The notes beneath the pieces are model-generated. The model was not told where the DNA came from, made no database searches, and saw only the letters and a program-made list of their open reading frames with translations. Below are positions 8,127-64,000 of a stretch of DNA of 64,000 nucleotides, piece after piece (within the stretch, counting starts at the first letter, position 1; every line of letters starts with the position of its first letter). The DNA lies in the IMG/VR virus record IMGVR_UViG_3300010403_000705, positions 186,001 through 250,000 of that record; one strand, given 5' to 3'. Both the position numbers and the translations under genes were made by a program.

Positions 8127-8130
8127 GAAA

Positions 8131-23067: not shown

Positions 23068-23336
23068 GAATTATGAAAAATTATTTTAATAATTTGATAA
23101 ATTTAATATTAAAAAATGAGCCTATTGATATTGAAATTAAGCATGTTAAAAAAGCCTTGAAGAGATATAAAAATGAACTAATTGATATAGAAATAAGCTG
23201 GGACAATTCTGATCAAATTTGTTGTATCGATTGCATGTTCCCGGAAAGAGTTGATTTATTAAAAAAGATTGAGCGAGTTGAATTTCAATTAAATCGTTTG
23301 ATTTATAAAAAAAATAAGCGTAAACAAAATCTATGA
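23064..23336 (+). CDS. Hypothetical protein
   Basis: 90 aa, overlapping start/stop with neighbours. Confidence 0.65.
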   Translation: MRIMKNYFNNLINLILKNEPIDIEIKHVKKALKRYKNELIDIEISWDNSDQICCIDCMFPERVDLLKKIERVEFQLNRLIYKKNKRKQNL

Positions 23337-26229: not shown

Positions 26230-26421
26230 ATGAAATCAGATGAAGAAGTTATTGCTGAAGCAAGCAGAATAGAATACGAAGAAAAAACTGGTAAGTTGTT
26301 TATTGTTTTTGAGGTGATTAATGAAAAATTAAAACAAGACATCAAAAAAAATTGGACAAAAGATATTGAATATAAAATAATAGACAAATGTTTAGTTTTA
26401 AATTTAAATGAAGATGAATGA
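26230..26421 (+). CDS. Hypothetical protein
   Basis: 63-aa ORF in operon. Confidence 0.6.
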   Translation: MKSDEEVIAEASRIEYEEKTGKLFIVFEVINEKLKQDIKKNWTKDIEYKIIDKCLVLNLNEDE

Positions 26422-26758
26422 AAACATATTTGACAATATTAAAGCAATTTGCGCTAATTATCCTAATATTTCTCTATCCATTCAAGATTGGTGCTCTATA
26501 ATGAAAGATAAAAATTCTCTTTGGAAAATGGTAGATATAGTAACAACCAAAGATCTTCTAATGAATGGAAACTATGGTATTTTATTTGGATGTAGAATAA
26601 TTGTTAGCAGGGTTATTCCAGAGGGAAATTTTAGAGTATCAATGAAAATAGATCCTATTAATCCAAGCAAGAAATTAGAAGATTGGTCTCCACAAATGAA
26701 TCTAAAAATCAATTTACATGATATAGAAAGATATCTAAAATTAGTAGCATTTTGGTGA
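26408..26758 (+). CDS. Hypothetical protein with C-terminal tag (RYLKLVAFW)
   Basis: Tag at the stop. Confidence 0.7.
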   Translation: MKMNENIFDNIKAICANYPNISLSIQDWCSIMKDKNSLWKMVDIVTTKDLLMNGNYGILFGCRIIVSRVIPEGNFRVSMKIDPINPSKKLEDWSPQMNLKINLHDIERYLKLVAFW

Positions 26759-33437: not shown

Positions 33438-34244
33438 ATGAGATTATCGTCAAACGAAGCATTTGCTTCAAATAATTTTATTACTCTAAAAAACCAAGAT
33501 TGGTTAGAAAAACAAAGAGTTGCTGGTAGAGTAGTTGCTGATGTTCTTTCGTTATTAGAAGCACAGGTAAAGAATAACACTAATTTATCATTAAATGAAT
33601 TAAATAAAATTGCTGAAGAATTTATTTTGGATAATAGATGCCAACTTACATTTAAAGGATACAAAGGTTTTCCAGCTGGAGTCTGTATTTCTGTTAATAA
33701 ACAATTGGTACATGGAATACCGTCTGATTATCATTTACAATCAGGGGATATAGTTAGTTTTGATTTAGGAGCTACTTTTGAAGGAGCAATTGCTGATGCA
33801 GCTATAACATGTATATATGGAAAACCTAAATCAGATATGCATATTATGTTAATAGAAGCTACTAAAGATTGTTTAATGAATGGCATTAATACTATCAAGA
33901 TTGGTAAAAAATTAGGATGTATTGGAGATGCTATTAGTAAATGTAATAAGAAATATGGTTTTGGATTAATAACTAAATATGGTGGTCATGGTTTAGATTG
34001 GAATAAACCCCACGCCCCACCATTTGTAGAAAATAAATCAAGTAGTGAGCAGGGTATAAGAATTCAATCCGGATTAACTATTGCTATAGAACCAATGTTG
34101 ATAATAGGTGACACTTATACTTATGTAGACAAAGATGGTTGGACAGTTTATGGTTCTGGTATTAGTGCTCATTTCGAACATTCAATTTTTATTCATGAAA
34201 ACAAAGTAGAGATACTTACACAAAGGAATTGTGACATCTACTAA
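33438..34244 (+). CDS. map: Methionine aminopeptidase type I
   Basis: CISVNKQLVHGIP, DIVSFDLG, IADAAIT, GGHG, AIEPM, SAHFEHS. Confidence 0.92.
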   Translation: MRLSSNEAFASNNFITLKNQDWLEKQRVAGRVVADVLSLLEAQVKNNTNLSLNELNKIAEEFILDNRCQLTFKGYKGFPAGVCISVNKQLVHGIPSDYHLQSGDIVSFDLGATFEGAIADAAITCIYGKPKSDMHIMLIEATKDCLMNGINTIKIGKKLGCIGDAISKCNKKYGFGLITKYGGHGLDWNKPHAPPFVENKSSSEQGIRIQSGLTIAIEPMLIIGDTYTYVDKDGWTVYGSGISAHFEHSIFIHENKVEILTQRNCDIY

Positions 34245-34578
34245 TTTAGTATTTATTTCAAAAAATACCAATAAAGGTATAAAGCTCTTTAGATGTCTAT
34301 ATTGTAATGATAATATAAAAGCTCATTTTTTATCAGAAACTAGATGTTATTTTTACTGTAAAATCTGTAAATGTCAGTTCATAAACCAACACGATATTTT
34401 AGTTGAAATAGATATTAAAACAAAAATTAATAGCAAATTTTATACTGTGAAATTAGATCTAGCAAAGAATCGAACTAATTTAGTTTCAGGTCACATAATA
34501 TATTCATGTGATGAGTGTGTATTGGTTACCCCTCAAAATATAAACAATAAAATACGCATGTGGTTATTAATGCAGTAA
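34231..34578 (+). CDS. Zinc-ribbon protein with C-terminal tag (KIRMWLLMQ); outlier of the 55.7-61.2 kb family
   Basis: CLYC...CKIC, TPQNINNKIRMWLLMQ. Confidence 0.65.
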   Translation: MTSTNLVFISKNTNKGIKLFRCLYCNDNIKAHFLSETRCYFYCKICKCQFINQHDILVEIDIKTKINSKFYTVKLDLAKNRTNLVSGHIIYSCDECVLVTPQNINNKIRMWLLMQ

Positions 34579-35109: not shown

Positions 35110-35430
35110 ATGTGTAATAAAAATGATAACCAACAACATCAAAATAATATATTGATAAATGAAGAATTATCTAAACATTCATGGAGAACTATAAGGAAAT
35201 TTGAAGAATTATTTCCGTGTTTAAATCCATTACATATTATTGAAGTGCAGAATAAAGAGTATCTTGATGAACAAAAAATTATTTCTTTAAAAATGAAGCT
35301 AGCTAAGAATCAAGGAACAGAATATAAAAAAATTCCTGAAACATTTACGACAGAACATATTCGTTACGAATCTGTCGAAGAATTTTGGCAAAGATGGAAT
35401 CGTTTCAAAAAAGTAAAATCATTTATATAA
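35110..35430 (+). CDS. Hypothetical protein with C-terminal tag (RFKKVKSFI)
   Basis: Tag at the stop. Confidence 0.7.
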   Translation: MCNKNDNQQHQNNILINEELSKHSWRTIRKFEELFPCLNPLHIIEVQNKEYLDEQKIISLKMKLAKNQGTEYKKIPETFTTEHIRYESVEEFWQRWNRFKKVKSFI

Positions 35431-35498: not shown

Positions 35499-35669
35499 AT
35501 GAAAATACAATTTGATGATAAATCTTATATAGAATGTCGTAAGTTAAATGACAAAATAATTGTTATAGTTTCAGCCAAAGATTACAATAATCCGCTAAAA
35601 AAAATTACTAACTCTGTAGAATTAAATATTGAAGAATTCAGAAAATTAATTTCAGATGTCCAGACGTAA
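35499..35669 (+). CDS. Small hypothetical protein (56 aa, not in ORF track)
   Basis: MKIQFDDKSYIECRKLNDKIIVIVSAKDYNNPLKKITNSVELNIEEFRKLISDVQT; overlaps the next start. Confidence 0.6.
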   Translation: MKIQFDDKSYIECRKLNDKIIVIVSAKDYNNPLKKITNSVELNIEEFRKLISDVQT

Positions 35670-36141
35670 GTTATTTTTACATAATGACGAGCTAATTAAT
35701 CAAAAAGCTGAAGAAAGAGCGGAAGAACTATGGAATAAATTAATTATTGATTATCCTTTAAAAGAATCTTCTTTATTAAATAATCTGTTTAAAAATATTA
35801 AACATATTACATATGCTTATATTGCTGGATTTACAGATTTCCACAAAAAATTTGATGAAAATTTTTGTATAACTGCTATTCATAAAACACAAAATAGCTG
35901 GGCAGCCTCATTAGATATTAATCAATGTTTGAATAAAAGAAGCTGGCTATTAAATAATGCATGTAATAATAAGTGGCGCAGTAAATTTACTATTTATTAT
36001 ATTGATCATCAGTTTGATATAGATTATCCATGTCCTCATGGTGATGATTATAAGGATGTATATTTAATGTTTTTTACTGAAGACGAAAAACAAACCGCTC
36101 AAATGTTAGAAAAATTTAATAGATTAAAGGCATTTGTATGA
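35656..36141 (+). CDS. Hypothetical protein with C-terminal tag (KFNRLKAFV)
   Basis: ATGA overlap with the next gene. Confidence 0.72.
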   Translation: MSRRKLFLHNDELINQKAEERAEELWNKLIIDYPLKESSLLNNLFKNIKHITYAYIAGFTDFHKKFDENFCITAIHKTQNSWAASLDINQCLNKRSWLLNNACNNKWRSKFTIYYIDHQFDIDYPCPHGDDYKDVYLMFFTEDEKQTAQMLEKFNRLKAFV

Positions 36142-44140: not shown

Positions 44141-44833
44141 ATGAATTTAGATAATTTATTAAACGATGCTATTAAAAATCTATTTGGCATAAACCCTTCC
44201 TTATCTGTAAAAAAAGTCAATCCAAAGAACTTATTAAATACTTCCATAAATGAACATGGCGAGGGAACTAGTTCTTTCGGTAGTAAAGTATTATCTAAAG
44301 CTAGGTCAGACATAGGAGTACATGAAGACTTAGGTAAGAATGATGGTAAAAGAATAAGAGAGTATTTTAAATATTTTAAAATGGGTGGAGGACAGGATTG
44401 GTGTGCGGCGGCAGTATCTGCATGGTTAATAGAAGCTGGCGGCGGACCAATTTCTGGAGCTGTTGGTGCCAGAAATGTTGGCGCTCAATTTGCACAAGCA
44501 GGAAGGTGGGTAGCAAGAGATAAAATATCTGCAAATCACATGATTCCAGGTAATATAGTCGTCTGGAGTCGAGGAGGTCCGGATTCTTGGAAAGGTCATA
44601 TAGGTGTTATAGAATCTTTTGATGGTCGTAATTCTTTCACATCTATCGAAGGAAACTCTGGACCACGCTCTGATGCAGTGGTTGTAAATACTCATTCCAT
44701 TAAAGACGCTAATTTATTAGGAGTAGGAATATTGTCTGATTATGTTCCAAGCTTTTCTAAAAAAAGTTTTGATAAAATTGATAAAATGGCGAATATATAT
44801 TACCAAAAAGCTTTTAAACTTATTAATTTTTGA
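44141..44833 (+). CDS. CHAP-domain peptidoglycan hydrolase
   Basis: QDWCAAAVSAW (Cys), PGNIVVW, GHIGVI (His), SIEGNSG. Confidence 0.8.
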   Translation: MNLDNLLNDAIKNLFGINPSLSVKKVNPKNLLNTSINEHGEGTSSFGSKVLSKARSDIGVHEDLGKNDGKRIREYFKYFKMGGGQDWCAAAVSAWLIEAGGGPISGAVGARNVGAQFAQAGRWVARDKISANHMIPGNIVVWSRGGPDSWKGHIGVIESFDGRNSFTSIEGNSGPRSDAVVVNTHSIKDANLLGVGILSDYVPSFSKKSFDKIDKMANIYYQKAFKLINF

Positions 44834-45303
44834 CAATGATTTGTAAATTCTGTATGACAGCGTTTTCCTTTAATTTTAGGTTGAACACACAATCCTATAG
44901 ATAGTAAATCATTTCTATTATATATCTTCAAATATTTTTTAAAAACAAAAATATTGAAAGGTTCGTTACCATAAGTTACAACAGCAGTCTCTAGTAATGG
45001 ATTTAATTGTTCTTTAATATGATCAATATAATATTCTTTAGAAATAACCCAACTAGGACAATGATAAACATTTATTTGATGTCCACAGGTAACAATACCT
45101 GTCCCAAAACTACAAAGTGTAATATTATTTGATGTTACTATATTATTTAAATGTATCTCTGTCCATTGTTTAGTTTGTCCATCATACATTGAATTTTCAC
45201 GTATATATGGAAATTCAGGATTACTACAAAGAGTTAGAATACCATTTCTATTATAAAAAGAAAAATCTTGATAATTTTTAGCTACTGTTTCATATACCTT
45301 CAT
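44800..45303 (-). CDS. Hypothetical protein with C-terminal tag (KLISLKAFW)
   Basis: Likely start MKVYETV at 45303; 3' end overlaps the CHAP gene antisense. Confidence 0.7.
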   Translation of the reverse strand: MKVYETVAKNYQDFSFYNRNGILTLCSNPEFPYIRENSMYDGQTKQWTEIHLNNIVTSNNITLCSFGTGIVTCGHQINVYHCPSWVISKEYYIDHIKEQLNPLLETAVVTYGNEPFNIFVFKKYLKIYNRNDLLSIGLCVQPKIKGKRCHTEFTNHCQKLISLKAFW

Positions 45304-45940
45304 AAATTTTCTCTTTCGTCCAACCAAAAGCTGATAAGGATAAATTGAATTTTTCAGTTTCATACACTTTTTGTAACATGTTTTTAGCTATTTTACGAAC
45401 TTCTAATTGGGCATGTGTGCTATTCCTTAGTCCTTGAAAATGCATAAAAGATCGAAAATTAAACATAATATCTGCTGTTAGTTGATTAGCATATGGAAGA
45501 TAAAATCTAGCACTCTCTTTAGCACGTTTTTTAGAAATACCAGAATTAATAAGCCTACTTAAACATTCATGATATTTTTTTAAAGATTCTTCGCAATGAT
45601 GAATCAATAGTAATTGCTCATCTTTTTCCCAATCAGAAGGTATATAATATTTATCATCTTTTAATTCTTTATATCTTGGTGATTCAGAATTAAAAGAAAC
45701 TCCAATCCTGTGTTTTAGAATATGTATATGTGTAGCCATATCTGTTGTAATTAAAAAATGCAAACTAGATTTTTCAAAAGGTGTATGATGACCCTCTTCT
45801 CCCAACATATTTAATAATTTATCTACTCTATTTCTTTTTTCCTCATTTATTTCTCTTTTAGTTGATGTCCATGCAGATAGCGCGTGCGTTTCATCTGATC
45901 CGTAAAAACCTACTAATTCTATTTTATTTTCATGTTTCAT
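45290..45940 (-). CDS. thyX: Flavin-dependent thymidylate synthase
   Basis: HHTPFE, KHRIGVSFNSESPRY (RHRx7S-type motif), ESARFYLP, NFRSFMHF..LR, HAQLEVR. Confidence 0.92.
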   Translation of the reverse strand: MKHENKIELVGFYGSDETHALSAWTSTKREINEEKRNRVDKLLNMLGEEGHHTPFEKSSLHFLITTDMATHIHILKHRIGVSFNSESPRYKELKDDKYYIPSDWEKDEQLLLIHHCEESLKKYHECLSRLINSGISKKRAKESARFYLPYANQLTADIMFNFRSFMHFQGLRNSTHAQLEVRKIAKNMLQKVYETEKFNLSLSAFGWTKEKIYEGI

Positions 45941-50542: not shown

Positions 50543-50824
50543 TCACCAAAATGCTTTCATCTTTTTTATTTTTTCTATTAGTAGTTTCATTTCATCCAAA
50601 TGGCTTGTTATTTTACGTTTATCCTCCATTTCTTCTATTATCGAAAGATCTGAATTTTTTAATTGTTCTATAAGAATACAAAATTCTTGATAATCCTCAA
50701 TTATATTCGTAATGTCATTGGGTGTTCCTACAACTAATTTTTTCTTAGCCATCTCATGAAATGACACTACAACATTTAGTATATGTTTATACGGATTCTT
50801 GATTATTTTTGTCTTTTTTGTCAT
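50543..50824 (-). CDS. Hypothetical protein with C-terminal tag (KIKKMKAFW)
   Basis: Tag at the stop. Confidence 0.72.
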   Translation of the reverse strand: MTKKTKIIKNPYKHILNVVVSFHEMAKKKLVVGTPNDITNIIEDYQEFCILIEQLKNSDLSIIEEMEDKRKITSHLDEMKLLIEKIKKMKAFW

Positions 50825-54500: not shown

Positions 54501-55019
54501 TTATATAAATGCAGTCAATTTTCTTATTGCTTGTAACCATCTGACGATATCTATTAAGACGTCTATAGTAATAGAATTTCCATATTTGAATTGATTAAAA
54601 TATGAATTCCAATTACATTTACTAAATCTAGAATCTTTAGTAGAATCTAATTTATAAAGCATTTTACAATTTCCTCCAGCTTGTGTATGTGTTTTTTCTT
54701 CATAGATACACATGTTCATTTTTAAATCGGACATGTCCGATTTAGTATAATCTGACTTGGTGATTTTAATCAAAAAATCACCAACTTTGATTGTGTTAGA
54801 TTTTAGAATGAAATCTTTTATCTTGTCTTTTTTGACGTCTGTTAAATCAACCATACCTTTATCTTTTGATTTAATTTTCTGTTTAATTTCAGATTCTGCT
54901 GGAATCCATGTCTCTTGATATACATCATCCGATGATGTATCATGATACTGTTGATCGACTAGACTCTTAATTAAATTATAGTATTCTTCAGTAGTAAAAG
55001 ATGTAGATCGTTTTATCAT
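54501..55019 (-). CDS. Hypothetical protein with C-terminal tag (AIRKLTAFI)
   Basis: Tag at the stop. Confidence 0.7.
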   Translation of the reverse strand: MIKRSTSFTTEEYYNLIKSLVDQQYHDTSSDDVYQETWIPAESEIKQKIKSKDKGMVDLTDVKKDKIKDFILKSNTIKVGDFLIKITKSDYTKSDMSDLKMNMCIYEEKTHTQAGGNCKMLYKLDSTKDSRFSKCNWNSYFNQFKYGNSITIDVLIDIVRWLQAIRKLTAFI

Positions 55020-55718: not shown

Positions 55719-55780
55719 GATTTTTGCGATTATGGGTGATTGTGCATAATATATCAAAATTTAATAAACTTATTGACTTT

Positions 55781-56314
55781 ATGAAGATCAATACAAATTG
55801 TGTATTTTGTGGTAATAAAACACCCTTTCTTTTTAAAGAATATATGCACGAAAATGATGAACATCTTACTTATAAGTTAGATAAAGATAATAATGTAAAT
55901 CTACAAATTAGTCAATCTACTTTAAGAAATTTACAAGCTGAAAAATCTGCTTTTGTTGGCGAAGATTTTCCTAATTATTTTGTGAATTGTAATTCACAAA
56001 ATAATAGTTACTCGATCAGTTTACGCACAGATCCTATGAAAACTTGTCCGTTATTTTTTAGTGATTCTGGAACTATTGCTCCTTTTGAATTTGATTTTTT
56101 AAGATTTGAAATAATAAAAAATCAAAATGATTCTACTATTATTGTGATTAATAATTATTTTCATAGAAAAACTTTTTTAATTGACATATCCACAAGCGAG
56201 ACTCATTCTTCCATGAGACGCAGTGATTTTGTTGAGTTACCATTAATAGATTTTGATTTTACTAATAAAGAAAAAATATCACAAAAAATTAAAACTTTAA
56301 TCACATTTTTATAA
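55781..56314 (+). CDS. Zinc-ribbon array member 1 (CVFC; ends KIKTLITFL)
   Basis: Likely start MKINTNC at 55781. Confidence 0.75.
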   Translation: MKINTNCVFCGNKTPFLFKEYMHENDEHLTYKLDKDNNVNLQISQSTLRNLQAEKSAFVGEDFPNYFVNCNSQNNSYSISLRTDPMKTCPLFFSDSGTIAPFEFDFLRFEIIKNQNDSTIIVINNYFHRKTFLIDISTSETHSSMRRSDFVELPLIDFDFTNKEKISQKIKTLITFL

Positions 56315-56895
56315 TGTTTTATAAAATACAAGACTTACTAGAGTATAAAAAATATTGTTCTATTTGTGATTACCCACTTTTGGCTATATTAAAAGATCGT
56401 AGTAGTGGAATACCAAATATAAATGTGAAGTTAAACAAAAATATATTCAAATTCAGATTACAATATACTTCAGCAAGTGATTACTTAAATGAAATTTGCA
56501 TTTTAAATGTAGATACTAATGAGTTAAGCATTCTCAACAAGGATAATGATTTATTAATCATACCGGTGGTAGAAAGAATTTTTGGATATGCTTGTGTGGC
56601 AGTAGAACTGCATTGCGTAAATAATAAATGCAAATATAATTATTACGTATGTACCACTTTCTTAAAACCAATTGCAAATAAGGATATTATAATTATTAAT
56701 CCAATTCTTATTGATATAGATTGCTATAATATCTCACATTTTTGGATTCAAAATGATTATTTAAATAAAATTACTAATATTTTTTCTACCTCTAAGCCGC
56801 AAAATAAACCCATTTCGGTTCCTTTATTGGAAATCGACCCCAATAACAAAAATAAAATTTTTAATAGAATTAAAACGATTGTTAATTTTTCTTGA
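56314..56895 (+). CDS. Zinc-ribbon array member 2 (CSIC; ends RIKTIVNFS)
   Basis: TAATG overlap with the upstream gene. Confidence 0.78.
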   Translation: MFYKIQDLLEYKKYCSICDYPLLAILKDRSSGIPNINVKLNKNIFKFRLQYTSASDYLNEICILNVDTNELSILNKDNDLLIIPVVERIFGYACVAVELHCVNNKCKYNYYVCTTFLKPIANKDIIIINPILIDIDCYNISHFWIQNDYLNKITNIFSTSKPQNKPISVPLLEIDPNNKNKIFNRIKTIVNFS

Positions 56896-57641
56896 AAAGA
56901 AAGATACCTGTCATGCAAGATTTTTTATTGTCTAATAAAGTATGTCCTATTTGTCAGAATCCATTAACCTTATTCATGAAATGGTCTAGCCATGATCTGG
57001 TTATTAATAAACTTTTTAAAGGATATGAAACAAAAGATAATACATATCAATTTAAAGAATACATTGCAGCTGCGCCAATTGCGGAAAATAATTTTCATTC
57101 TTCAGATGAAATGTTGAGAAATGTGAAAGTTCTGATGATTCTAAAATTTATTAATAATGAATGCAATTTTCAATTTAATTCTCTAATAGCAGAGAAAATG
57201 GCTAAAGAACAGGAAGAATTATTTTTTTATTATATATGTAATCCTGCCGGTATTAAACCAGATAATATGATTAATATTTATGAAGCGTGTTATTATAGAG
57301 CCACTCCTCTTATGAAATTTATTGAGGGAGATTCTAGTTTATTGAAAATAAAACAATTAGACGAAAAATATAATGTCATTAATAGTTTAGAGTCTTTTAC
57401 TATAAAAGACGAAACTACTGATTCTGAATTAAAAAAGATATATATAGTTTATTTAAATTATCTTGATGAAAAACTTTCTTTTTATTACTACACGGCTACT
57501 GCTGAACAAGAAGCGTCAGAACATTATAATCCTAATATTTTTGTGGGTGAAATTCCTATTCCCAAAAATGGATTAAATCTTGATTTAAACGCCAGAGATA
57601 AATTAATTTCTAGAATGGATTCTTGGATTCTTATGTCATAA
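56892..57641 (+). CDS. Zinc-ribbon array member 3 (CPIC; ends RMDSWILMS)
   Basis: TTGA overlap; start could be 56913. Confidence 0.75.
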   Translation: MKRKIPVMQDFLLSNKVCPICQNPLTLFMKWSSHDLVINKLFKGYETKDNTYQFKEYIAAAPIAENNFHSSDEMLRNVKVLMILKFINNECNFQFNSLIAEKMAKEQEELFFYYICNPAGIKPDNMINIYEACYYRATPLMKFIEGDSSLLKIKQLDEKYNVINSLESFTIKDETTDSELKKIYIVYLNYLDEKLSFYYYTATAEQEASEHYNPNIFVGEIPIPKNGLNLDLNARDKLISRMDSWILMS

Positions 57642-57714
57642 TAGACACTATTACCCATCCAGCATAGAAACCTAGAAAATTGACATCTTTCTATCGGAAT
57701 AAAAAAAAATTTAT

Positions 57715-58800
57715 ATGCAAACAATAAATCAACTATTAGAATCTTGTAAAAATAAATTGGTATTTCTGCAAAATATGATACCTATCACGCAAAATCAAAA
57801 TAGGTTAAAAGAAATAGATGATTTGGTAAGTAATAGTAATATCTGGGCTTCTCCTAAAGAAGCCGCTTCTCTAATGAAAGAACGTCAAAAAGTTTCTGAC
57901 ATATTAAAGAAATTGTCTTCTTATCAAGATCAGATTAATTTTTACATAGAGTGTCAACAGTATATGCCAGAAGAATTAATAAAAATTTCTTCACAGGTAG
58001 AAGATTTGCATAAAGATATTTCTTTGTTTGAATTTAAACAGATGATGAATGATCCTATAGATGATAGTCCAGCTATTCTTACTATTAATGCTGGTGCTGG
58101 CGGATTAGAAGCTGCCAATTGGACCAGTATGTTATTGCGTATGTATTCTAGATATGCAGATTCAAATAAGTTTAAACTAGAAATGCTAGATATGAAACCC
58201 TCAGAAGAACATGCAAGTATTTGTACTGACTGTGTTTCTATAAGAGTGGAAGGTCCGTACGCATATGGATTTTTAAAAGGTGAGGCGGGAGTTCATAGAT
58301 TAATAAGAAATTCTCCGTTCAATTCAGGAGATGCTAGGCATACTTCTTTTGCTGCCGTGGCTGTTTTACCAGATATTGAAGACAAATTATCAATTGATAT
58401 TCAAATAAATGAGAAAGATATAGAAATTACTACTATGCGCGCCTCTGGTGCAGGTGGACAAAATGTTAATAAAGTAGAAAGTGCTGTTAGATTAAAACAC
58501 ATTCCAACAGGAATTGTAATTAATTCTCGTTCTGAAAGAGATCAGCATACCAATAGAAAAATAGCTATGAAGATTCTGAAAGCAAAACTTTATGAAATAG
58601 AAATGCAAAAACAGAATAAAGAGAAAGAAAAATATTTCTCCAGCATGCAAGATAATTCTTTTGGTCATCAAATAAGGTCTTATATTTTATTTCCAACTCA
58701 GATGGTCAAAGATCATCGAACAAATTTTGAAGTAAGAGATGCGGAAAAAGTCTTAGATGGAGATATTGAAGAATTCATTATGGCTTATTTACATTCTTAA
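57715..58800 (+). CDS. prfB: Peptide chain release factor 2, no programmed frameshift
   Basis: [14 protein letters not shown] (SPF), [17 protein letters not shown] (GGQ), QIRSY. Confidence 0.93.
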
Positions 58801-58805
58801 TCAAA

Positions 58806-59381
58806 ATGATAAGTAATTTTACCATCAAAGATTTTATTAATTATAATAATCCATGTTTTTGCTGCGGAAATTCAGTTTCACTAAAAATGTTTTCTAGCGC
58901 AGATGAAATTATGGGCAGTGGAATAGTCCTAATTCCTGCCGTATATCAAAATGCACTAGAAGTGGATTTGGAAATTACCTATCTTTCAACTTTAAAATTA
59001 AAAATTTATCCAAAAACTAATAAATTTATTTCTTCGAGTCATGATAGCTTGACAAAATACTTACAAGGACGTAAACTGTCTTTGATAAGCAGATGTGATG
59101 GTTGTAGTACATTCGTTAAAAGTTTGAGTTTGGAATTTAATTTGGATAGAGAATTTATAAAACCTCTTTCTATTGAAGAAGAAATGTTGTTTTTATACGA
59201 TAAAGATTTTTTATTTAGGGTTAGATCTTTATTTAAAAATAATTACAGCGAATTGCTTATTATTAAATATAAAAAACCTTCCGAAACGTTCAAATTAACA
59301 ATGCCTCTTCAGCCAAGAAGTAAATTTAAAAATACACAACAGCTTCTAAAAAAAATAAAAACTTTAATGCTTTTCTCTTAA
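58806..59381 (+). CDS. Zinc-ribbon array member 4 (CFCC...CDGC; ends KIKTLMLFS)
   Basis: N-terminus IKDFINYNNPC resembles member 2 (IQDLLEYKKYC). Confidence 0.78.
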   Translation: MISNFTIKDFINYNNPCFCCGNSVSLKMFSSADEIMGSGIVLIPAVYQNALEVDLEITYLSTLKLKIYPKTNKFISSSHDSLTKYLQGRKLSLISRCDGCSTFVKSLSLEFNLDREFIKPLSIEEEMLFLYDKDFLFRVRSLFKNNYSELLIIKYKKPSETFKLTMPLQPRSKFKNTQQLLKKIKTLMLFS

Positions 59382-59425
59382 ATACATTGCTTATCATAAT
59401 GGTGTCCTTGCAGAAGGAATAAATT

Positions 59426-59767
59426 ATGAATAGTTCACACAATTGTCCGATTTGTAAAACTCTTATGATGGAAGATAAATATACTTTTCCAATCCCAGAA
59501 TCAACTGATTTGATCTGTCGTCAAGATAATCATTTTTTTGTAAAAAGAATTAGCCCAGTTACCAATCAAGTTTCGGAATTGAAAATTAAACTTCAGTGCG
59601 GAGAAGAAGAGCTGTATCTTAAAATAAATTATAATAGAAATTACACTGATGTATGGGCGACCGCAAATAATTCAAAACATATTAGAATTCCATATATCTT
59701 GATGTCAGATTTTGAAGATTTTAATAAAATTAAACATAAAATAAAAACTTGCCTTCTTTTTTCTTAA
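59426..59767 (+). CDS. Zinc-ribbon array member 5 (CPIC...C..DNH; ends KIKTCLLFS)
   Basis: AAGGA upstream. Confidence 0.78.
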   Translation: MNSSHNCPICKTLMMEDKYTFPIPESTDLICRQDNHFFVKRISPVTNQVSELKIKLQCGEEELYLKINYNRNYTDVWATANNSKHIRIPYILMSDFEDFNKIKHKIKTCLLFS

Positions 59768-59769
59768 TT

Positions 59770-60111
59770 ATGCAAATGCCAATTAAATGCCCAATCTGTT
59801 CCGGACCCATGAATAATGATTTTCTTCCATCTTCCGGCGGAAAAGAATATCTAAGGAAGTGTTGCGAAGTAAAACTAAATCATAAAATTATTTATACTTC
59901 TTCCATAAATCATGATGAGGTGCAGCAGTTTGATCTAATATTATCACTTGATAAGTTATCAGTAGCAAGATTTGTTTGGTCACCAAATCATAAAATACTT
60001 AATGTATATAAAAATAACACTCATACAACCAATATTCCATATTTTGAACCGCAATTAAATAACTTAAAAGCTCTAAAAGACAAGTTAAAATTGTATTTAT
60101 TATTCTTATAG
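59770..60111 (+). CDS. Zinc-ribbon array member 6 (CPIC...CC...NH; ends KLKLYLLFL)
   Basis: Likely start MQMPIKC at 59770. Confidence 0.75.
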   Translation: MQMPIKCPICSGPMNNDFLPSSGGKEYLRKCCEVKLNHKIIYTSSINHDEVQQFDLILSLDKLSVARFVWSPNHKILNVYKNNTHTTNIPYFEPQLNNLKALKDKLKLYLLFL

Positions 60112-60131
60112 CTGATGTTATATGAAATGCC

Positions 60132-60455
60132 ATGAAAGAGTTTTCCTATTGCCCAATTTGTGCGAATAAATTAAAAAGCCGACTGTTTAAGGATAACATT
60201 AAACTTCTTTCTTGCCAGGAAGGAGTGGCACATTACATTTCTTTTAAATTGCAAGACCAACAAATGTCAAACATGACATTATACTTAGATAATTATTCGT
60301 ACTTGGAAATGGATTTTTTAAAACAAATATCTACCTATTACTATGATCCTTTAAATGGGATGGCTAAGCTGGTGATTCCTAAAATTATAGAACCGGATTT
60401 TCCGCAACTCAAAAATTTAAAAGAAAAACTATTAAAGTATGTGTTGTTTACATAA
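60132..60455 (+). CDS. Zinc-ribbon array member 7 (CPIC...C...AH; ends KLLKYVLFT)
   Basis: Same layout as neighbours. Confidence 0.78.
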   Translation: MKEFSYCPICANKLKSRLFKDNIKLLSCQEGVAHYISFKLQDQQMSNMTLYLDNYSYLEMDFLKQISTYYYDPLNGMAKLVIPKIIEPDFPQLKNLKEKLLKYVLFT

Positions 60456-60497
60456 TCTTTTGGTAATTTACCAGTCTCTTGCATCTGTTGTTTTTAT

Positions 60498-60860
60498 ATG
60501 AAATGTGTGTTTTGTGATAATGATTGTGTCATACAAGCCAGAAGTAATTCCGCTTGTGAAAAGTATATGAAATTTGCGATGTTTTATCCTATTTGTAAAA
60601 TATGTCAAATATCCTATAAAGTCAACTGGTCAAAAAGAGAATATATATCTGCGATTGTTTTTATGATCAAAGATCAAGAAACTTGTCCAACTATTGTTAC
60701 TAATCATCTGATTATAGACGTACAAGAAAATTCTACCAAACTATTCGGTCGTGCCAATTTTGATAAACCTATTATTGATCTTTCTTATGCGATGGACATT
60801 CATCCAAATAATTTGTATGAACGTTTAACAAAATTAAAGAAATTAATTTTATTCTCATAA
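60498..60860 (+). CDS. Zinc-ribbon array member 8 (CVFC...CKIC; ends KLKKLILFS)
   Basis: Same layout as neighbours. Confidence 0.78.
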   Translation: MKCVFCDNDCVIQARSNSACEKYMKFAMFYPICKICQISYKVNWSKREYISAIVFMIKDQETCPTIVTNHLIIDVQENSTKLFGRANFDKPIIDLSYAMDIHPNNLYERLTKLKKLILFS

Positions 60861-60861
60861 T

Positions 60862-61194
60862 ATGAATTGTTATTACTGTAAACAAAATATTGATGTTATG
60901 TCATTGTGGTCTTATAGTAAAAATACTGTATTTTGTGAAAAATGTAAAGCTTATCAGAGTTATCACCAAGGATATTTATATAATATTTGTTTTATGTTCG
61001 ATGAAAATAAATCAGTCTCTGATCAGTCTACGAAAAAAGGTTACTGGATCGTAATCAATGTTGTGAGAAATCAATTCTCATTAGAGTTAAATAACTCAAT
61101 AATTATTAAGGATCTGCCCGAAGCTGATAAAATCACTCCTGCTAATGTACAAGAAACACTGTATAGACTATTGAGGTTAAAAGCGTATCTTTAA
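60862..61194 (+). CDS. Zinc-ribbon array member 9 (CYYC...CEKC; ends RLLRLKAYL)
   Basis: Zinc-ribbon body carrying the KAF-type tag variant. Confidence 0.78.
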   Translation: MNCYYCKQNIDVMSLWSYSKNTVFCEKCKAYQSYHQGYLYNICFMFDENKSVSDQSTKKGYWIVINVVRNQFSLELNNSIIIKDLPEADKITPANVQETLYRLLRLKAYL

Positions 61195-61199: not shown

Positions 61200-61480
61200 A
61201 GAGTGTGAGGTGTGTTATTAAAAGATAATGCTATAAGATGCTTAAATAAAGATTAAGAGATAAAAATCGATTATTGGAGATATGGTTGGTAATTTGAGAA
61301 GGTTTGAGGGTGAGTAGAAGCTGAGATATGATAATACTGAGAGTAAAATGCAGTTAAATTATTACTTAACCCTCATTTGGGGGGCAAGGATCGTGCCCGC
61401 TCGACCCATCGCCAACCTTTCCATCGCTCACTGTATTGCCCTGTGGCGCGTTCTGTCTCTAAGACCTTACCCATCCTTTA
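61200..61480. other. Non-coding junction with GC-skew inversion and GC-content step
   Basis: Hand count: about 42 G vs 5 C in 61201-61350, about 15 G vs 35 C in 61391-61480; GGGGGG at 61379-61384. Confidence 0.65.
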
Positions 61481-61565
61481 TATGATGTATAATAATAAAT
61501 TTATCTTGTAGATAATGATCTTATTATTAATCATCTCCCATCATTGATCATATTAATAATTAATT

Positions 61566-61757
61566 ATGCAAACCAGACCCGTTATCGTGGTTTCCATTCA
61601 AACTAGCCTCAGATCATTCGAGATTCGGGCTTATCATGGGTCACCCATCGGCAAAAAGCGTTCGGCAGTCGATGCTATGCAAGCCGCACAACGTGGTAAG
61701 ACCGTGGTGTGGAGCAATGACGGGCGGGAACCCATCACCTTCAATGCCAGAGGCTAG
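61566..61757 (+). CDS. Small hypothetical protein
   Basis: 63 aa, first ORF after an AT-rich spacer. Confidence 0.55.
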   Translation: MQTRPVIVVSIQTSLRSFEIRAYHGSPIGKKRSAVDAMQAAQRGKTVVWSNDGREPITFNARG

Positions 61758-61761
61758 GGAT

Positions 61762-61902
61762 ATGGATCCTGTCATCATGATTCTGGTTTGGATCGGCGGG
61801 GCTTTCGGCTTTCAAGAGCGTTGGCACTGGAAGGGAACCGTAGGGTATCTGATTACTACGATGGTCTTGCAGTTCATCATCAGTTACTCACCCATCATCT
61901 AA
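61762..61902 (+). CDS. Small membrane protein (46 aa)
   Basis: MDPVIMILVWIGGAFG...KGTVGYLITTMVLQFII; GAGG/GGGA upstream. Confidence 0.55.
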   Translation: MDPVIMILVWIGGAFGFQERWHWKGTVGYLITTMVLQFIISYSPII

Positions 61903-61920
61903 TGGTCTCTGAGAGATATC

Positions 61921-62202
61921 ATGGAACTCCTTCTCACCAGCGTCCTGTTCATTGTCTGCTGTTTCATTGGCAAAGGCAAAGGAGTTGCAGCATACCTGAT
62001 TGGTACAGTGGCTATCATAGTGATGAGCAATCACCAAGCTGATATGTTGCAACTGTATAACAACCATCAGTTGCCGTTGCTTATCGGGGCTTCCATCATT
62101 CCCATCATCTCTATTATGATTAGCCGGTGGTGGGGACTATTCTTCTATCTGTTCGCTTCTATAGCAGTCACGGCTCTTGTCATAGCTACTGTCGTGGTCT
62201 AA
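61921..62202 (+). CDS. Multi-pass membrane protein (family A)
   Basis: GKGVAAYLIGT...YNNHQ...ISRWWGLFFY; GAGAG upstream. Confidence 0.75.
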   Translation: MELLLTSVLFIVCCFIGKGKGVAAYLIGTVAIIVMSNHQADMLQLYNNHQLPLLIGASIIPIISIMISRWWGLFFYLFASIAVTALVIATVVV

Positions 62203-62205
62203 TGA

Positions 62206-62234
62206 AGAGGGGGACTAGCGCCCCCTCTGTTGTT
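62206..62234 (+). terminator. Hairpin terminator-like
   Basis: AGAGGGGG-7 nt-CCCCCTCT, then GTTGTT, just after the stop. Confidence 0.65.
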
Positions 62235-62246
62235 AGAGTTGTGACT

Positions 62247-62281
62247 TGGTACATCACTTGCAGATTGCATATTCAATGCCA
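62247..62281. promoter_or_regulatory. 35-bp dyad of sigma54-like arms (copy 1)
   Basis: TGGTACATCACTTGCA-gat-TGCATATTCAATGCCA. Confidence 0.7.
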
Positions 62282-62334
62282 AGTGATGTAGATGATTGTT
62301 AGAGACCCATCAAGTAATCAATCTGAAATTAACT

Positions 62335-62637
62335 ATGCTCCTCATCTCGATCCTCTCCTTGGTTCTGTCAATCACCTCGATCTTCGTGGGTGGTGGCAAA
62401 GGAATTGCTATGTGGGTGATTGGCACGATTGCCTTAATCATCGCTGGCAACTTTCTGGGGAATGTGATTCAGATGTACAGCAATCATCAGGGACCCATCC
62501 TCCTGGCAACTGCGGGGATTCAGGTAGTGGCGATTCTCATCTCGCGGTGGTGGGGTTTGGTTTTTTACTTCGTTGCTTCGGTGGGTCTTACCCTGGTTCT
62601 TTTCCTCGGTGCCCTGGCTACCATGACGGTTGGTTGA
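62335..62637 (+). CDS. Multi-pass membrane protein (family A paralog)
   Basis: GKGIAMWVIGT...YSNHQ...ISRWWGLVFY. Confidence 0.75.
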   Translation: MLLISILSLVLSITSIFVGGGKGIAMWVIGTIALIIAGNFLGNVIQMYSNHQGPILLATAGIQVVAILISRWWGLVFYFVASVGLTLVLFLGALATMTVG

Positions 62638-62671
62638 TAGACCCATCTACTTGTTGCTCGGAGAGATAGCA

Positions 62672-62815
62672 ATGCTAACCATCTTTTGGCTGATTGGTCT
62701 GCTTTACTGTTGCATTAAGTCCGGTTCGGAAGGAGTAGCTTTTTACCTGCTGGCAACCTTCCTGTTTTTTCTTCTGTTAGGTCGTGTCAATTACAGCTTG
62801 CATAGTGGGTTCTAA
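62672..62815 (+). CDS. Small membrane protein (family A, short)
   Basis: CCIKSGSEGVAFYLLAT; GGAGA upstream. Confidence 0.6.
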   Translation: MLTIFWLIGLLYCCIKSGSEGVAFYLLATFLFFLLLGRVNYSLHSGF

Positions 62816-62835
62816 CCAATCTGTTGTATGCTGGT

Positions 62836-62870
62836 AGTCCTGGATCCTCCTAAAATAAGGATCCAGGACT
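62836..62870 (+). terminator. 13-bp stem hairpin
   Basis: AGTCCTGGATCCT-9 nt-AGGATCCAGGACT. Confidence 0.65.
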
Positions 62871-62890
62871 TACCTGTCATCTATTCTTGT

Positions 62891-62925
62891 TGGCATATCA
62901 ATTGCAATATACAGTATCTATACCA
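62891..62925. promoter_or_regulatory. 35-bp dyad of sigma54-like arms (copy 2)
   Basis: TGGCATATCAATTGCA-ata-TACAGTATCTATACCA. Confidence 0.7.
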
Positions 62926-62978
62926 AGGTGCAAAAAAGACTACTGCAAACCCATCCATTATTGATCTTGCTCTAAGTT

Positions 62979-63134
62979 ATGAAGAACCTCTTTTGGTACG
63001 GTGTGGTCTTCGTGGGCGGTTTGTTCGTTGGGACGCAGTACATCTCTCCCATCCTGCCGCAGTTGAATCATACTGTGACGGCGATTTCGGATGGCGCCAG
63101 TAGCGTCAAGTCGTCTCTTCCCAAGGTCAAGTAA
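62979..63134 (+). CDS. Small N-anchored membrane protein (family B, 51 aa, not in ORF track)
   Basis: MKNLFWYGVVFVGGLFVGTQYISPILPQLNHTVTAISDGASSVKSSLPKVK; paralog of 63170. Confidence 0.7.
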   Translation: MKNLFWYGVVFVGGLFVGTQYISPILPQLNHTVTAISDGASSVKSSLPKVK

Positions 63135-63169
63135 GTCCTGCGCCGACTCTTACATTACGATAAGCGACA

Positions 63170-63358
63170 ATGAAGACCATCTTTCTGACTTTGACTCTGG
63201 TTGTTGGTGGAATGTATGTGGGCGTCAAGTATGTGGCACCTATTGTGCCGCAAGCTCACATTCCGACGGCGGTAGAGTTCAAGGATGCTTTGCATAAGCT
63301 GCATCAGGAAGTCTCTTGTCCGGTCGGACCCAATCAGAGTAAGTGTCGCAAGATGTAA
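63170..63358 (+). CDS. Small N-anchored membrane protein (family B)
   Basis: MKTIFLTLTLVVGGMYVGVKYVAPIVPQ. Confidence 0.7.
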   Translation: MKTIFLTLTLVVGGMYVGVKYVAPIVPQAHIPTAVEFKDALHKLHQEVSCPVGPNQSKCRKM

Positions 63359-63388
63359 CCCATCACGATCGAAAGGATACTCAATATC

Positions 63389-63589
63389 ATGAATTATTCT
63401 CCGCAGAAGCGTGCTGCCCGTACTCGTGAGCTGAACCGGCTGATTGACGCGCAGCTCAAAGATGACGACGCTCGACCCGCCCGCGTCAAGCGTCTTCGGG
63501 CTCCCATCGACGACACCGATCTGCTGCCTGATCTCTACCGCTCTCCACGCGGTCGGCGTAAGCAGAAGCCGCACCATACCCACGACTGA
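63389..63589 (+). CDS. Small basic protein
   Basis: Arg-rich 66 aa, GAAAGGA upstream, GC-rich codons. Confidence 0.7.
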   Translation: MNYSPQKRAARTRELNRLIDAQLKDDDARPARVKRLRAPIDDTDLLPDLYRSPRGRRKQKPHHTHD

Positions 63590-63596
63590 ACCAACT

Positions 63597-63626
63597 ATGC
63601 CTGGCACCTTTTAGGTTGCCAGGCAT
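63597..63626 (+). terminator. Hairpin terminator-like
   Basis: ATGCCTGGCA-CC-TTTT-AGG-T-TGCCAGGCAT, then TATTATTT. Confidence 0.7.
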
Positions 63627-63646
63627 TATTATTTAAACTAGTTGTT

Positions 63647-63785
63647 TGGCATATGAGTTGCAATTAGCACAAGCTGTACCAAGGGCAAATTTAATAAGCC
63701 TGCACTTATGGCACGGAAGTTGTAATTAGCATAAGCTGTTCCAAGTCTTATGGCACGCTAGTTGCTAACTACAAGTCTTGTACCA
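63647..63785. promoter_or_regulatory. Three tandem 35-bp sigma54-like dyads (63647-63681, 63709-63743, 63751-63785)
   Basis: TGGCATATGAGTTGCA-att-AGCACAAGCTGTACCA; TGGCACGGAAGTTGTA-att-AGCATAAGCTGTTCCA; TGGCACGCTAGTTGCT-aac-TACAAGTCTTGTACCA. Confidence 0.75.
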
Positions 63786-63978
63786 AGCTCTGTGATGTCT
63801 TAGAAGACACCCATCAATTACTATGATGTTGCTTAGACACCGGTTGACGCTAAGCAAAGCGCGAAACCGAAGCGGTGGCGAATAGCTGCTGCGCCCCTTA
63901 CGGTGGTTTCTCTCTCCCATCCCGTAAAGGGGTGATCCAATAAGAGAGACAGATTCCAGCAACCAAAAGGAGCGCATC

Positions 63979-64000
63979 ATGAATTCTCGCACCGACCACA
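63979..64000 (+). CDS. Start of a CDS running off the window
   Basis: AAGGAG at 63967-63972, ATG at 63979 (MNSRTDH...). Confidence 0.55.

What the first reader, a model, noticed from the sequence alone, without database searches (positions are those of the whole stretch)
55781..61194. Tandem array of nine highly diverged zinc-ribbon paralogs, all ending in the tag
SEEN: nine co-oriented genes (107-249 aa) start with CxxC near the N-terminus and usually have a second Cys/His pair. They continue through a beta-rich, low-identity middle, most (members 1-7) with a hydrophobic-P-hydrophobic turn (VELPLID, ISVPLLE, IRIPYIL, TNIPYFE, LVIPKII), and finish with the tag helix. A tenth member lies at 34231. 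The ends are conserved while the middle is hypervariable. INFERENCE: a diversifying adaptor family in which a variable module recognises different host targets and a constant tail recruits a shared effector. This resembles the logic of F-box-like adaptors or expanded anti-defence families.
Basis: partly seen in the sequence, partly recalled or inferred. Interest (0 to 1): 0.72.

Follow-up and report, generated by a model that had tools for sequence, protein, structure and literature searches.

The report
Expanded zinc-protein family in jumbo phage
Nine neighbouring genes of a roughly 430 kb soil phage belong to a large, fast-evolving and so far undescribed family of small zinc-binding proteins that all end in the same short helix, and a similar ending occurs on 7-20% of all genes in this phage group, which nobody has yet explained.

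Summary
Nine co-oriented ORFs at 55.7-61.2 kb, and a tenth at 34231, share an N-terminal CxxC, a second Cys/His pair, a beta-rich middle, a hydrophobic-Pro-hydrophobic turn and a strictly C-terminal helix (...K[IL]KT[YL]LxFS-stop).

Models built only from other phages recover all ten. The window is part of a 432,844 bp soil jumbo phage. Every relative examined has the same array around a phage RF2 gene, with 7 to about 25 copies. At least 1,111 unnamed metagenomic cluster representatives match.

AlphaFold models are very confident (pLDDT 89 and 96). They show an antiparallel beta sheet closed by the terminal helix, with no convincing match in PDB or AFDB. No Pfam, PHROGs, NCBIfam or PADLOC family matches.

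Orthologs are 21-48% identical where RF2 is 57-77%. The ends are better conserved than the middle. Positive selection could not be shown because dS is saturated.

My best reading is a clade-specific arsenal of diversified binding proteins in which the "tag" is mainly the structural helix of the fold. The same kind of tail sits exactly at the C-terminus of 41-100 ORFs per genome with unrelated bodies, so a shared recognition signal stays a serious rival. No partner was identified.

The parts
55724..56314 (+). Member 1 (long type, 177-196 aa; start uncertain, TTG 55724 or ATG 55781). CxxC, tail ...KIKTLITFL.
   Evidence: ORF. Long-family HMM built without this genome gives E 1.6e-18, short HMM 2.3e-6. 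hhalign to m2 97%, to m4 96%. The ortholog in G002 begins MKLIEFM, which matches KLIDFM upstream of the ATG.
56314..56895 (+). Member 2 (long type, 193 aa). Tail ...RIKTIVNFS. Its start overlaps the stop of member 1.
   Evidence: Long HMM E 5.6e-24. Orthologs in G001-G004 are 29-48% identical.
56892..57641 (+). Member 3 (long type; the ORF opens at TTG 56892, likely start ATG 56913, 242 aa). Tail ...RMDSWILMS. The most divergent member.
   Evidence: Long HMM E 1.7e-19. Orthologs (tail ...SWIIMS/SWVIMS) sit at the same place in G001, G002 and G004. Profile links to the other members are weak.
57715..58800 (+). Peptide chain release factor 2 (prfB, 361 aa, SPF and GGQ motifs). It is embedded in the array at the same position in all relatives examined. 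It is not a family member.
   Evidence: Pfam PCRF + RF-1. NCBIfam prfB 410 bits, above the cut-off of 370. Synteny in G001-G004 and in 8 further loci.
58806..59381 (+). Member 4 (long type, 191 aa). Starts 6 nt after the RF2 stop. Cys17/Cys20/Cys97/Cys100. Tail ...KKIKTLMLFS.
   Evidence: A3 alignment with four invariant Cys. Orthologs found in 13 viral contigs. AlphaFold pLDDT 95.6, pTM 0.88. Long HMM E 2e-38.
59426..59767 (+). Member 5 (short type, 113 aa). Cys7/Cys10/Cys31/His36. IRIPYIL turn. Tail helix 99-112 ...KIKTCLLFS.
   Evidence: A2/A4 alignments. AlphaFold pLDDT 89.3, pTM 0.81. Short HMM E 1.3e-17.
59770..60111 (+). Member 6 (short type, 113 aa from ATG 59770; the ORF opens at TTG 59749). 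Tail ...KLKLYLLFL. Stop codon TAG.
   Evidence: Short HMM E 8e-17. hhalign to m5 97.7%, to m7 98.3%.
60132..60455 (+). Member 7 (short type, 107 aa). Tail ...KLLKYVLFT.
   Evidence: Short HMM E 6.5e-17. hhalign to m6 is 96.7% even with the last 22 residues removed.
60498..60860 (+). Member 8 (short type, 120 aa, extra Cys pairs). Tail ...KLKKLILFS.
   Evidence: Short HMM E 1.1e-7. hhalign to m9 97.3%, and 93% without the tail.
60862..61194 (+). Member 9 (short type, 110 aa). Tail ...RLLRLKAYL, which is closer to the LKAF[WL] variant. Last gene before the GC jump.
   Evidence: Short HMM E 1.1e-5. Orthologs in G001 and G002 are 37-40% identical.
34231..34578 (+). Dispersed tenth member (115 aa, three Cys pairs). 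Tail ...KIRMWLLMQ.
   Evidence: Short HMM built without this genome gives E 2.7e-5 over residues 19-113. Tail score is above the 99.9th percentile.

Best explanation
The nine genes and the tenth are members of a clade-specific multigene family of a group of roughly 430-480 kb soil jumbo phages.

Fold. Each gene encodes one small domain of a kind not yet described. An N-terminal CPxC knuckle and a second Cys/His pair (C-x4-H in the short form, CxxC in the long form) presumably hold one zinc ion. The zinc site clamps an antiparallel, meander-like beta sheet of about 7 strands in the short form and about 11 in the long form. The last 14 or so residues form an amphipathic helix that ends the protein. 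The long members share both ends with the short ones and carry about 80 extra residues of sheet in between.

Evolution and expression. The family grew by tandem duplication inside an operon that also carries the phage's RF2 gene. A conserved proximal core (m1-m7) is inherited vertically. The distal part expands and contracts between phages.

Most likely mechanism (inferred, not shown). These are a set of diversified binding proteins made together, for host take-over or counter-defence. The zinc site and the terminal helix are the constant scaffold. The sheet surface and loops diverge to bind different targets.

On this reading the "tag" is conserved mainly because its hydrophobic face (L, I, Y/L, F) packs on the sheet. 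Its lysine-rich face stays exposed and could add a common contact surface.
For: Shown:
- Real co-oriented ORFs with protein-level conservation of the tail.
- Family membership by HMMs built from other genomes and by profile-profile comparison, which also holds with tails removed within subfamilies.
- The same array around RF2 in four complete relatives and eight further contigs, with 7 to about 25 copies.
- 1,111 cluster representatives at E<=1e-3 and 502 at E<=1e-10. All of the 150 best listed are about 100-139 aa full-length matches (one is a 204 aa double). All eight clusters checked are unnamed or 'hypothetical protein'.
- Invariant C7/C10/C31/H36 in the short form and C17/C20/C97/C100 in the long form.
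- AlphaFold pLDDT 89.3/pTM 0.81 and 95.6/pTM 0.88. The terminal helix is at pLDDT about 90-95, as expected for a packed helix and not for a free one.
- No operon-internal terminators.
- Fast divergence with the middle least conserved. dN is 0.05-0.46 against 0.05-0.08 in conserved neighbours.

Inferred: zinc binding, the binding-protein role and co-expression.
Against: - No function is demonstrated and there are no expression data. The only run that holds the locus is a soil DNA metagenome.
- A purely structural helix does not explain why the protein ends exactly one residue after the Phe in 128 of 149 distant representatives and 180 of 198 clade members.
- It also does not explain why similar tails sit on bodies with no detectable similarity (113 clusters among 147 sequences).
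- Coordinates of the models could not be inspected, so packing of the helix is inferred from confidence values only.
- Median pI of 8.2 and the lysine face would equally fit nucleic-acid binding.
Confidence: 0.45

Rival explanations
1. The tail is a portable C-terminal address, a true tag read by one shared machine. It would mark a large class of small, fast-turning-over phage proteins for a common fate: timed degradation, packaging into the capsid, or delivery to a compartment or chaperone. A concrete version is a C-degron for a Clp-type protease. The phage encodes two ClpP subunits and a tmRNA, and basic-then-hydrophobic C-termini are one known class of ClpX signals (MuA-type, from the literature as I recall it; not tested here).
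For: - Tail-like ends occur in 41 of 608 ORFs in this genome against 0.6 expected. In relative G004 100 of 667 ORFs pass a strict definition, and 143 have Phe at position -2, against 0.8 expected. G003 has 21 strict and 61 with Phe at -2.
- 147 non-zinc tagged ORFs fall into 113 body clusters once the tail is removed.
- Bodies include repeat proteins of the WYxNGxLHRxDGPA type. Their homologs elsewhere occur both with and without a ...KLKAFW end.
- Tagged ORFs lying between conserved genes have few orthologs but keep the tail.
- The terminal position is strict.
- Two bona fide ClpP-like genes (E 5e-50 and 1.6e-46), a tmRNA and RF2 are in the same genome.
Against: - In the two modelled members the tail is a confidently placed helix of the domain, not a flexible appendix.
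- No reader was found. There is no PDZ or S41 protease and no recognisable ClpX; there is only a weak AAA_2 fragment in an ORF that also carries a LAGLIDADG domain.
- The zinc-family tail (18 residues from the DF motif to the end) and the KAFW tail (11 residues from EEF to the end) differ in length and may be convergent.
- All bodies glimpsed so far look beta-rich, so one helix-capped-sheet architecture could explain the sharing.
Confidence: 0.3
2. The family are nucleic-acid-binding proteins: specific transcription factors, or DNA- or RNA-coating proteins. Iyer et al. 2021 proposed this for the roughly 35-copy zinc-ribbon expansion of Bacillus phage G.
For: - A zinc knuckle pair and a terminal helix with one lysine-rich face (sequence).
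- Median pI 8.2 against 7.6 for the genome.
- The precedent in PMC7824862.
Against: - pI ranges from 4.8 to 9.3, and m1 and m3 are acidic.
- There is no match to any DNA-binding family.
- All structural matches are at noise level.
- No repeated operator-like DNA was looked for or found.
Confidence: 0.15
3. The family works with the embedded RF2 on the ribosome, for example as accessory factors for termination or ribosome rescue.
For: - RF2 sits at the same place inside the array in all twelve related loci.
- The m4 ortholog follows RF2 within 1-6 nt or overlaps it.
- The genome also carries a tmRNA and an amber-suppressor tRNA.
Against: - The complex prediction of RF2 with m4 scored 0.00. The tool states that this is no evidence either way.
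- 7 to about 25 fast-evolving copies are hard to reconcile with a conserved partner such as RF2 or the ribosome.
- Dispersed members lie far from RF2.
Confidence: 0.07

Closest known systems
Zinc-ribbon expansion of Bacillus phage G (gp448-gp474; described as about 35 copies by Iyer, Anantharaman, Krishnan, Burroughs and Aravind 2021, PMC7824862)
   Same: A tandem, lineage-specific array of about 27 small proteins in a jumbo phage, each with a CPxC knuckle and a family-wide conserved C-terminal helix motif. Phage G also holds the only tubulin homolog of this phage found among 50,697 deposited phage records (23% identity).
   Different: Profile-profile comparison aligns only the 13-residue CPIC knuckle. 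In phage G the knuckle lies mid-protein (position about 100-130). The conserved end (YWKENDRYLxKIL) is followed by variable residues and does not match ...YLxFS-stop. This is an analog, not a demonstrable homolog.
F-box and poxvirus PRANC adaptor families (variable repeat body plus constant module that recruits a ubiquitin ligase); my own knowledge, not tested
   Different: The constant part here is a single helix of about 14 residues predicted to belong to the fold, not a 40-50 residue three-helix F-box. There is no Pfam F-box hit. Bacteria have no SCF system, and no recruited partner is known.
Phage and bacterial repeat proteins of the WYxNGxLHRxDGPA type (MORN-variant-like, some labelled DUF6745) that end in ...EEFxKxxKLKAFW
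   Same: They carry the related KAF[WL] tail at the exact C-terminus, occur in the same phage clade, and have a beta-hairpin-rich body.
   Different: They have no zinc site, a different body and a shorter tail. At least 1,390 homologs are known, many of them outside this clade and many without the tail.
C-terminal degrons of ClpXP substrates (ssrA ...LAA; MuA-type basic-hydrophobic ends); my own knowledge
   Same: A short signal that must sit at the very C-terminus. This phage encodes ClpP x2 and a tmRNA.
   Different: Nothing has been tested. The tail is predicted helical and packed, and known degrons are shorter and unstructured.
Classical zinc ribbons (TFIIS, TFIIB, Elf1, primase type)
   Different: No Pfam zinc-ribbon family reaches significance (best E 0.098-0.6, one member each). 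The knuckles are 21-77 residues apart and clamp a 7-11 stranded sheet rather than a three-stranded ribbon.

Membership tests
Classical zinc ribbon (Pfam zinc-ribbon families) | Two CxxC-type knuckles that can bind one zinc ion | tested here: met
   C7/C10/C31/H36 are invariant in 15 m5-m7 orthologs. C17/C20/C97/C100 are invariant in m4 orthologs. Metal binding itself was not measured.
Classical zinc ribbon (Pfam zinc-ribbon families) | Significant match to a curated zinc-ribbon profile, and a compact three-stranded ribbon | tested here: not met
   No Pfam hit passes. The best zinc-finger E-values are 0.098-0.6, each in a single member. The models show 7 and about 11 strands plus helices.
F-box / PRANC adaptors | A 40-50 residue helical F-box module with a profile match | tested here: not met
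   No F-box family in the Pfam scan of all ten members. The constant end is one helix of 14 residues.
F-box / PRANC adaptors | The constant module binds a shared effector (Skp1-like) | not testable with these tools
   No candidate partner is known. The only pair tried (RF2 + m4) gave no answer.
Phage G zinc-ribbon expansion (gp448-474) | Homology over the domain, not only at the knuckle | tested here: not met
   hhalign of A4 against the 25-member phage G alignment aligns 13 columns only. HMM hits in phage G have E 1.7e-4 to 0.07.
MORN / MORN-variant repeat proteins | Repeated YxNGxxxG-type units recognised by Pfam MORN profiles | tested here: not met
   None of the ten members hits MORN. Even the non-zinc tagged repeat protein reaches only E 0.18.
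Known phage protein families (PHROGs) and defence or anti-defence catalogues (PADLOC) | Profile match of several members | tested here: not met
   PHROGs: one member, E 0.0023. PADLOC: one member, E 2.9e-4. NCBIfam: none.
ClpX-type C-terminal degron | Tail-dependent degradation by ClpXP | not testable with these tools
   There is only context: ClpP x2 and a tmRNA in the genome.

The most novel reading that the evidence does not exclude
The C-terminal ...[KR]-hydrophobic-x-x-hydrophobic-x-x-F-x-COOH ending is a proteome-wide address label of a whole clade of soil jumbo phages. It would be written on 7-20% of their genes, whatever the fold. It would be read by one machine, for instance the phage's own ClpP pair with a host or phage unfoldase, a packaging route or a compartment. 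That would give the phage a built-in way to time, sort or dispose of its accessory proteins. The zinc family would then be the largest cargo class.
Probability: 0.25. Interest if true: 0.85.

Novelty: new variant of a known kind. Interest (0 to 1): 0.6.

Why it matters
Lineage-specific expansions of small proteins are where large viruses keep much of their host-manipulation repertoire, and almost none from uncultured jumbo phages is understood.

This one gives:
- a new, confidently predicted fold with over a thousand distinct relatives in metagenomes;
- a clean natural series of copy-number change (7 to about 25) around a fixed landmark, the RF2 gene;
- a short, strictly terminal motif shared with many unrelated small genes, which can be tested directly with tail swaps and truncations.

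If the tail proves to be a sorting or turnover signal, that would be a new principle of phage proteome organisation and a handy portable tag. If it is only structural, the family is still a useful marker and a candidate pool for new anti-defence or take-over proteins.

Tried and rejected
- Chance or non-genes: rejected. Evidence is protein-level conservation with synonymous changes, orthologs in 12 genomes, and HMM recovery.
- DNA-level repeat (promoter, terminator or recombination cassette) as the cause of the shared end: rejected. Codons differ between copies, and promoter- and terminator-like sites are not enriched.
- Direct search for close relatives with single proteins: only the phage's own near-identical copies came back. 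Relatives were reached through the tubulin gene and through an orthogroup alignment instead. An alignment of m5-m7 was too variable for the locus finder.
- Homology with the phage G array: only the knuckle aligns.
- Internal duplication in the long members: not supported. N-terminal against C-terminal half gives 1.7%.
- Fold assignment: Foldseek on PDB and AFDB, VIA-align wide and the ESM Atlas all stay at noise level. The PDB sequence hit 3pmc (E 0.035) I dismissed as chance. As I recall it is a helical sensor domain; I did not check this here.
- dN/dS: dS is saturated (>1.5 or undefined) even between the closest loci, L064 and L066.
- RF2-m4 complex: score 0.00, no answer.
- Stop-codon recoding as an explanation for RF2 plus suppressor tRNA and for the low ORF density in the GC-rich block: there is no excess of same-frame ORF pairs split by one particular stop.
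- Readers of C-termini: no PDZ domain and no S41 protease.
- RNA evidence: the one call made (kind 'any', which is not a search for RNA runs) listed a single soil DNA run and no RNA run.

Full report
WHAT IS THERE

The window is bases 186,001-250,000 of a single 432,844 bp contig. It carries hallmarks of a jumbo phage: a TubZ/PhuZ-like tubulin, UvsW and DnaB helicases and a ribonucleotide reductase, together with 38 tRNAs, a tmRNA and an amber-suppressor tRNA. The only public run that holds the locus is a soil metagenome.

At 55.7-61.2 kb there are nine co-oriented, tightly packed ORFs of 107-249 aa. Each has CxxC within the first 26 residues and ends in a related sequence, for example ...KIKTLMLFS...KIKTCLLFS...KLKLYLLFL and ...RLLRLKAYL.

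The DNA that encodes the ends uses different synonymous codons in different copies, so it is the protein that is conserved and not a DNA element.

A release factor gene lies between members 3 and 4, which the finding did not mention. It is RF2 (Pfam PCRF + RF-1; NCBIfam prfB 410 bits, above the cut-off).

No Pfam, PHROGs, PADLOC or NCBIfam family matches the ten proteins beyond single, weak hits.

IS IT A FAMILY?

Inside this one genome the pairwise similarities are weak (phmmer E 0.001-1), so relatives were needed.

The tubulin gene led to 50 loci in IMG/VR from a clade of phages with contigs up to 481 kb. Four of these genomes are complete. In all four, and in eight further contigs found with an alignment of member 4 orthologs, the gene order is the same:
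- a kinase-like gene;
- two or three long CxxC/tail genes;
- RF2;
- the member 4 ortholog;
- orthologs of members 5, 6 and 7;
- a variable run of further short members.

Copy number in the array is 9 here and 7, 10, 25 and 20 in the four complete relatives. The further loci, some of them cut by contig ends, each hold 14-26 tagged ORFs. In total 198 distinct members were collected.

HMMs built only from members of other genomes recover all nine genes and the gene at 34231. They also recover about nine more dispersed genes of this genome.

Profile-profile comparison gives three tight subfamilies:
- m1/m2/m4 at 92-97%;
- m5/m6/m7 at 98%, and 92-97% after removal of the last 22 residues;
- m8/m9 at 97%, and 93% without the tail.

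The short family matches the last 103 residues of the long family at 96.6% (E 5e-10), and it matches the long family's N-terminal knuckle separately. Long and short forms therefore share both ends and differ by about 80 residues in between. Member 3 is the loosest member.

A profile of the m5-m7 group finds 1,111 cluster representatives at E<=1e-3 among 1.84 billion proteins, and 502 at E<=1e-10. Nearly all of the 150 best listed are full-length matches of about 100-139 aa. None of the eight sampled clusters carries an informative name.

STRUCTURE

With a 48-sequence alignment, member 5 is predicted at pLDDT 89.3 and pTM 0.81. The model has seven antiparallel strands followed by one helix, residues 99-112, which is the "tag".

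With 36 sequences, member 4 is predicted at pLDDT 95.6 and pTM 0.88. The model has a short N-terminal helix, five strands, a helix, six or seven strands and the terminal helix 177-190.

The invariant residues are C7/C10/C31/H36 in the short form and C17/C20/C97/C100 in the long form. That fits one zinc site tying the N-terminus to the sheet. Zinc binding is inferred, not measured.

The helix has hydrophobic residues at i, i+3, i+7, i+10/11 and i+13, with lysines in between. Its pLDDT of about 90-95 suggests that it is packed on the sheet. I could not inspect coordinates.

Neither model has a convincing structural relative:

EVOLUTION

Orthologs of the nine genes are 21-48% identical across the complete relatives. 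RF2 is 57-77% identical and the kinase-like gene 61-70%.

Within orthogroups, identity is 30-57% around the N-terminal knuckle, 24-29% in the middle and 37-54% in the last 22 residues.

Between the two closest loci (RF2 89% identical) dN is 0.05-0.46 for family members against 0.05-0.08 for conserved neighbours. dS is saturated there. The few computable dN/dS values are 0.03-0.12.

So the family evolves fast and copy number turns over, but positive selection is not shown.

THE TAIL IS BIGGER THAN THE FAMILY

In this genome 41 of 608 non-overlapping ORFs have a last decamer that scores above the 99.9th percentile of internal decamers, against 0.6 expected. About half of them lack an N-terminal CxxC and end in ...[KR]Lxx[LM]KAF[WLI].

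In relative G004, 100 of 667 ORFs pass a strict tail definition against 0.8 expected, and 143 have Phe at position -2. In G003 the counts are 21 and 61.

With the tail removed, 147 non-zinc tagged proteins fall into 113 clusters. The largest cluster is a repeat protein of the WYxNGxLHRxDGPA type. It has at least 1,390 homologs, some of which end in ...KLKAFW while others end differently.

Tagged ORFs that lie between well-conserved genes near the tubulin gene have only 0-3 detectable orthologs among 50 loci, and most of those hits keep the tail. Their untagged neighbours have about 35 orthologs.

Among 149 distant representatives of the zinc family, 128 have Phe at -2 and 113 end in Ser. All but about 20 of them end one residue after their last Phe.

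Tagged genes are nearly absent from the large-gene block at 105-200 kb and from the GC-rich block.

HOW IT MOST LIKELY WORKS

Best-supported reading (0.45): a clade-specific arsenal of small binding proteins. They are co-transcribed, since there are no internal terminators. The zinc site and the terminal helix form the scaffold, and the sheet surface diversifies.

Main rival (0.30): the tail is a genuine address or degron read by a shared machine. The genome-wide census and the strict terminal position argue for this. The confident, fold-integrated helix and the lack of any identified reader argue against it. There is no PDZ domain or S41 protease. Two ClpP-like genes are present, but no clear ClpX was found.

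Weaker rivals:
- A nucleic-acid-binding role, as proposed for the analogous phage G expansion: 0.15.
- A role with RF2, suggested by conserved synteny and close coupling of m4 to RF2. The complex prediction scored 0.00, which the tool says is no evidence either way: 0.07.

COMPARISON AND NOVELTY

The kind of thing, a lineage-specific tandem expansion of small zinc-knuckle proteins in a jumbo phage, has one published precedent, in phage G (PMC7824862). That array shares only the knuckle with this one.

New here are the fold, the family and its size in metagenomes, its fixed association with RF2, and above all the tail shared with many unrelated small genes. I rate this a new variant of a known kind. 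The proteome-wide tag is the most novel reading that the evidence does not exclude (probability about 0.25).

Noticed in passing
window 61400-64000 (genome 247-345 kb): GC content jumps from about 28% to 45-52% right after the last array gene and stays raised for about 100 kb, with short ORFs and low coding density. In relatives G001-G004 the arrays likewise end at a jump to higher GC. No stop codon shows an excess of same-frame split ORFs, so recoding does not explain it. IMG/VR labels the record 'provirus', possibly because of this block.
   Followed up: partly
window 57715-58800; genome 55645-55997 and 58637-58710: The phage encodes RF2, a tmRNA (tag ANDNAFVPMAQAA), a tRNA with anticodon CUA (amber suppressor) and 38 tRNAs. 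Member 6 (59770-60111) is the only array gene that stops at TAG. Read-through would add 8 residues after the tail.
   Followed up: partly
genome 66177-67709 (outside the window; locus L124): Two tandem ClpP-like genes (157 and 167 bits to Pfam CLP_protease). They are closer to cellular ClpP than to head-maturation proteases. A DksA/TraR-type zinc-finger ORF precedes them.
   Followed up: partly
genome 34201-36357 (locus L123:1202-3358): A 718 aa ORF with a fragment of a Clp/Hsp100-type AAA_2 domain and a LAGLIDADG domain. It may be an AAA+ ATPase interrupted by an intein. No NCBIfam model recognises it.
   Followed up: partly
window 61921-62202 and 62296-62637: Two paralogous, very hydrophobic small ORFs (93 and 113 aa, several predicted membrane spans) directly after the array, at the start of the GC-rich block. 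A similar hydrophobic ORF follows the array in relative G001.
   Followed up: no
window 14311-14667, 21751-22080, 22687-23067, 23333-23725, 26408-26758, 35110-35430, 35656-36141, 44800-45363(-), 50543-50824(-), 54501-55019(-): Ten further small ORFs without an N-terminal CxxC that end in the related tail ...LKAF[WLIV], ...KSFI or ...MIFT. They are interleaved with well-conserved untagged genes and have few detectable orthologs.
   Followed up: partly
window 44803-45363 (-): This tagged ORF (tail ISLKAFW) resembles Kelch-repeat proteins by language-model features (score 0.92, 142-156 shared features). It has no Pfam hit and a poor Atlas model. A weak lead only.
   Followed up: no
window 18352-19752: A TubZ/PhuZ-like tubulin. 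The only hit among 50,697 deposited phage records is Bacillus phage G gp138 at 23% identity. IMG/VR holds 50 loci with 64-88% identical copies, which defines an uncultured clade.
   Followed up: yes
window 1008-12129: Two giant ORFs of 2,372 and 1,332 aa with no family match apart from a Laminin_G_3 (concanavalin-like) stretch in the first.
   Followed up: no
window 59426-59767: A near-identical database variant of member 5 (P0003) reads CPMM instead of CPIC and so lacks the second zinc ligand. This may be a sequencing error or a decaying copy.
   Followed up: no
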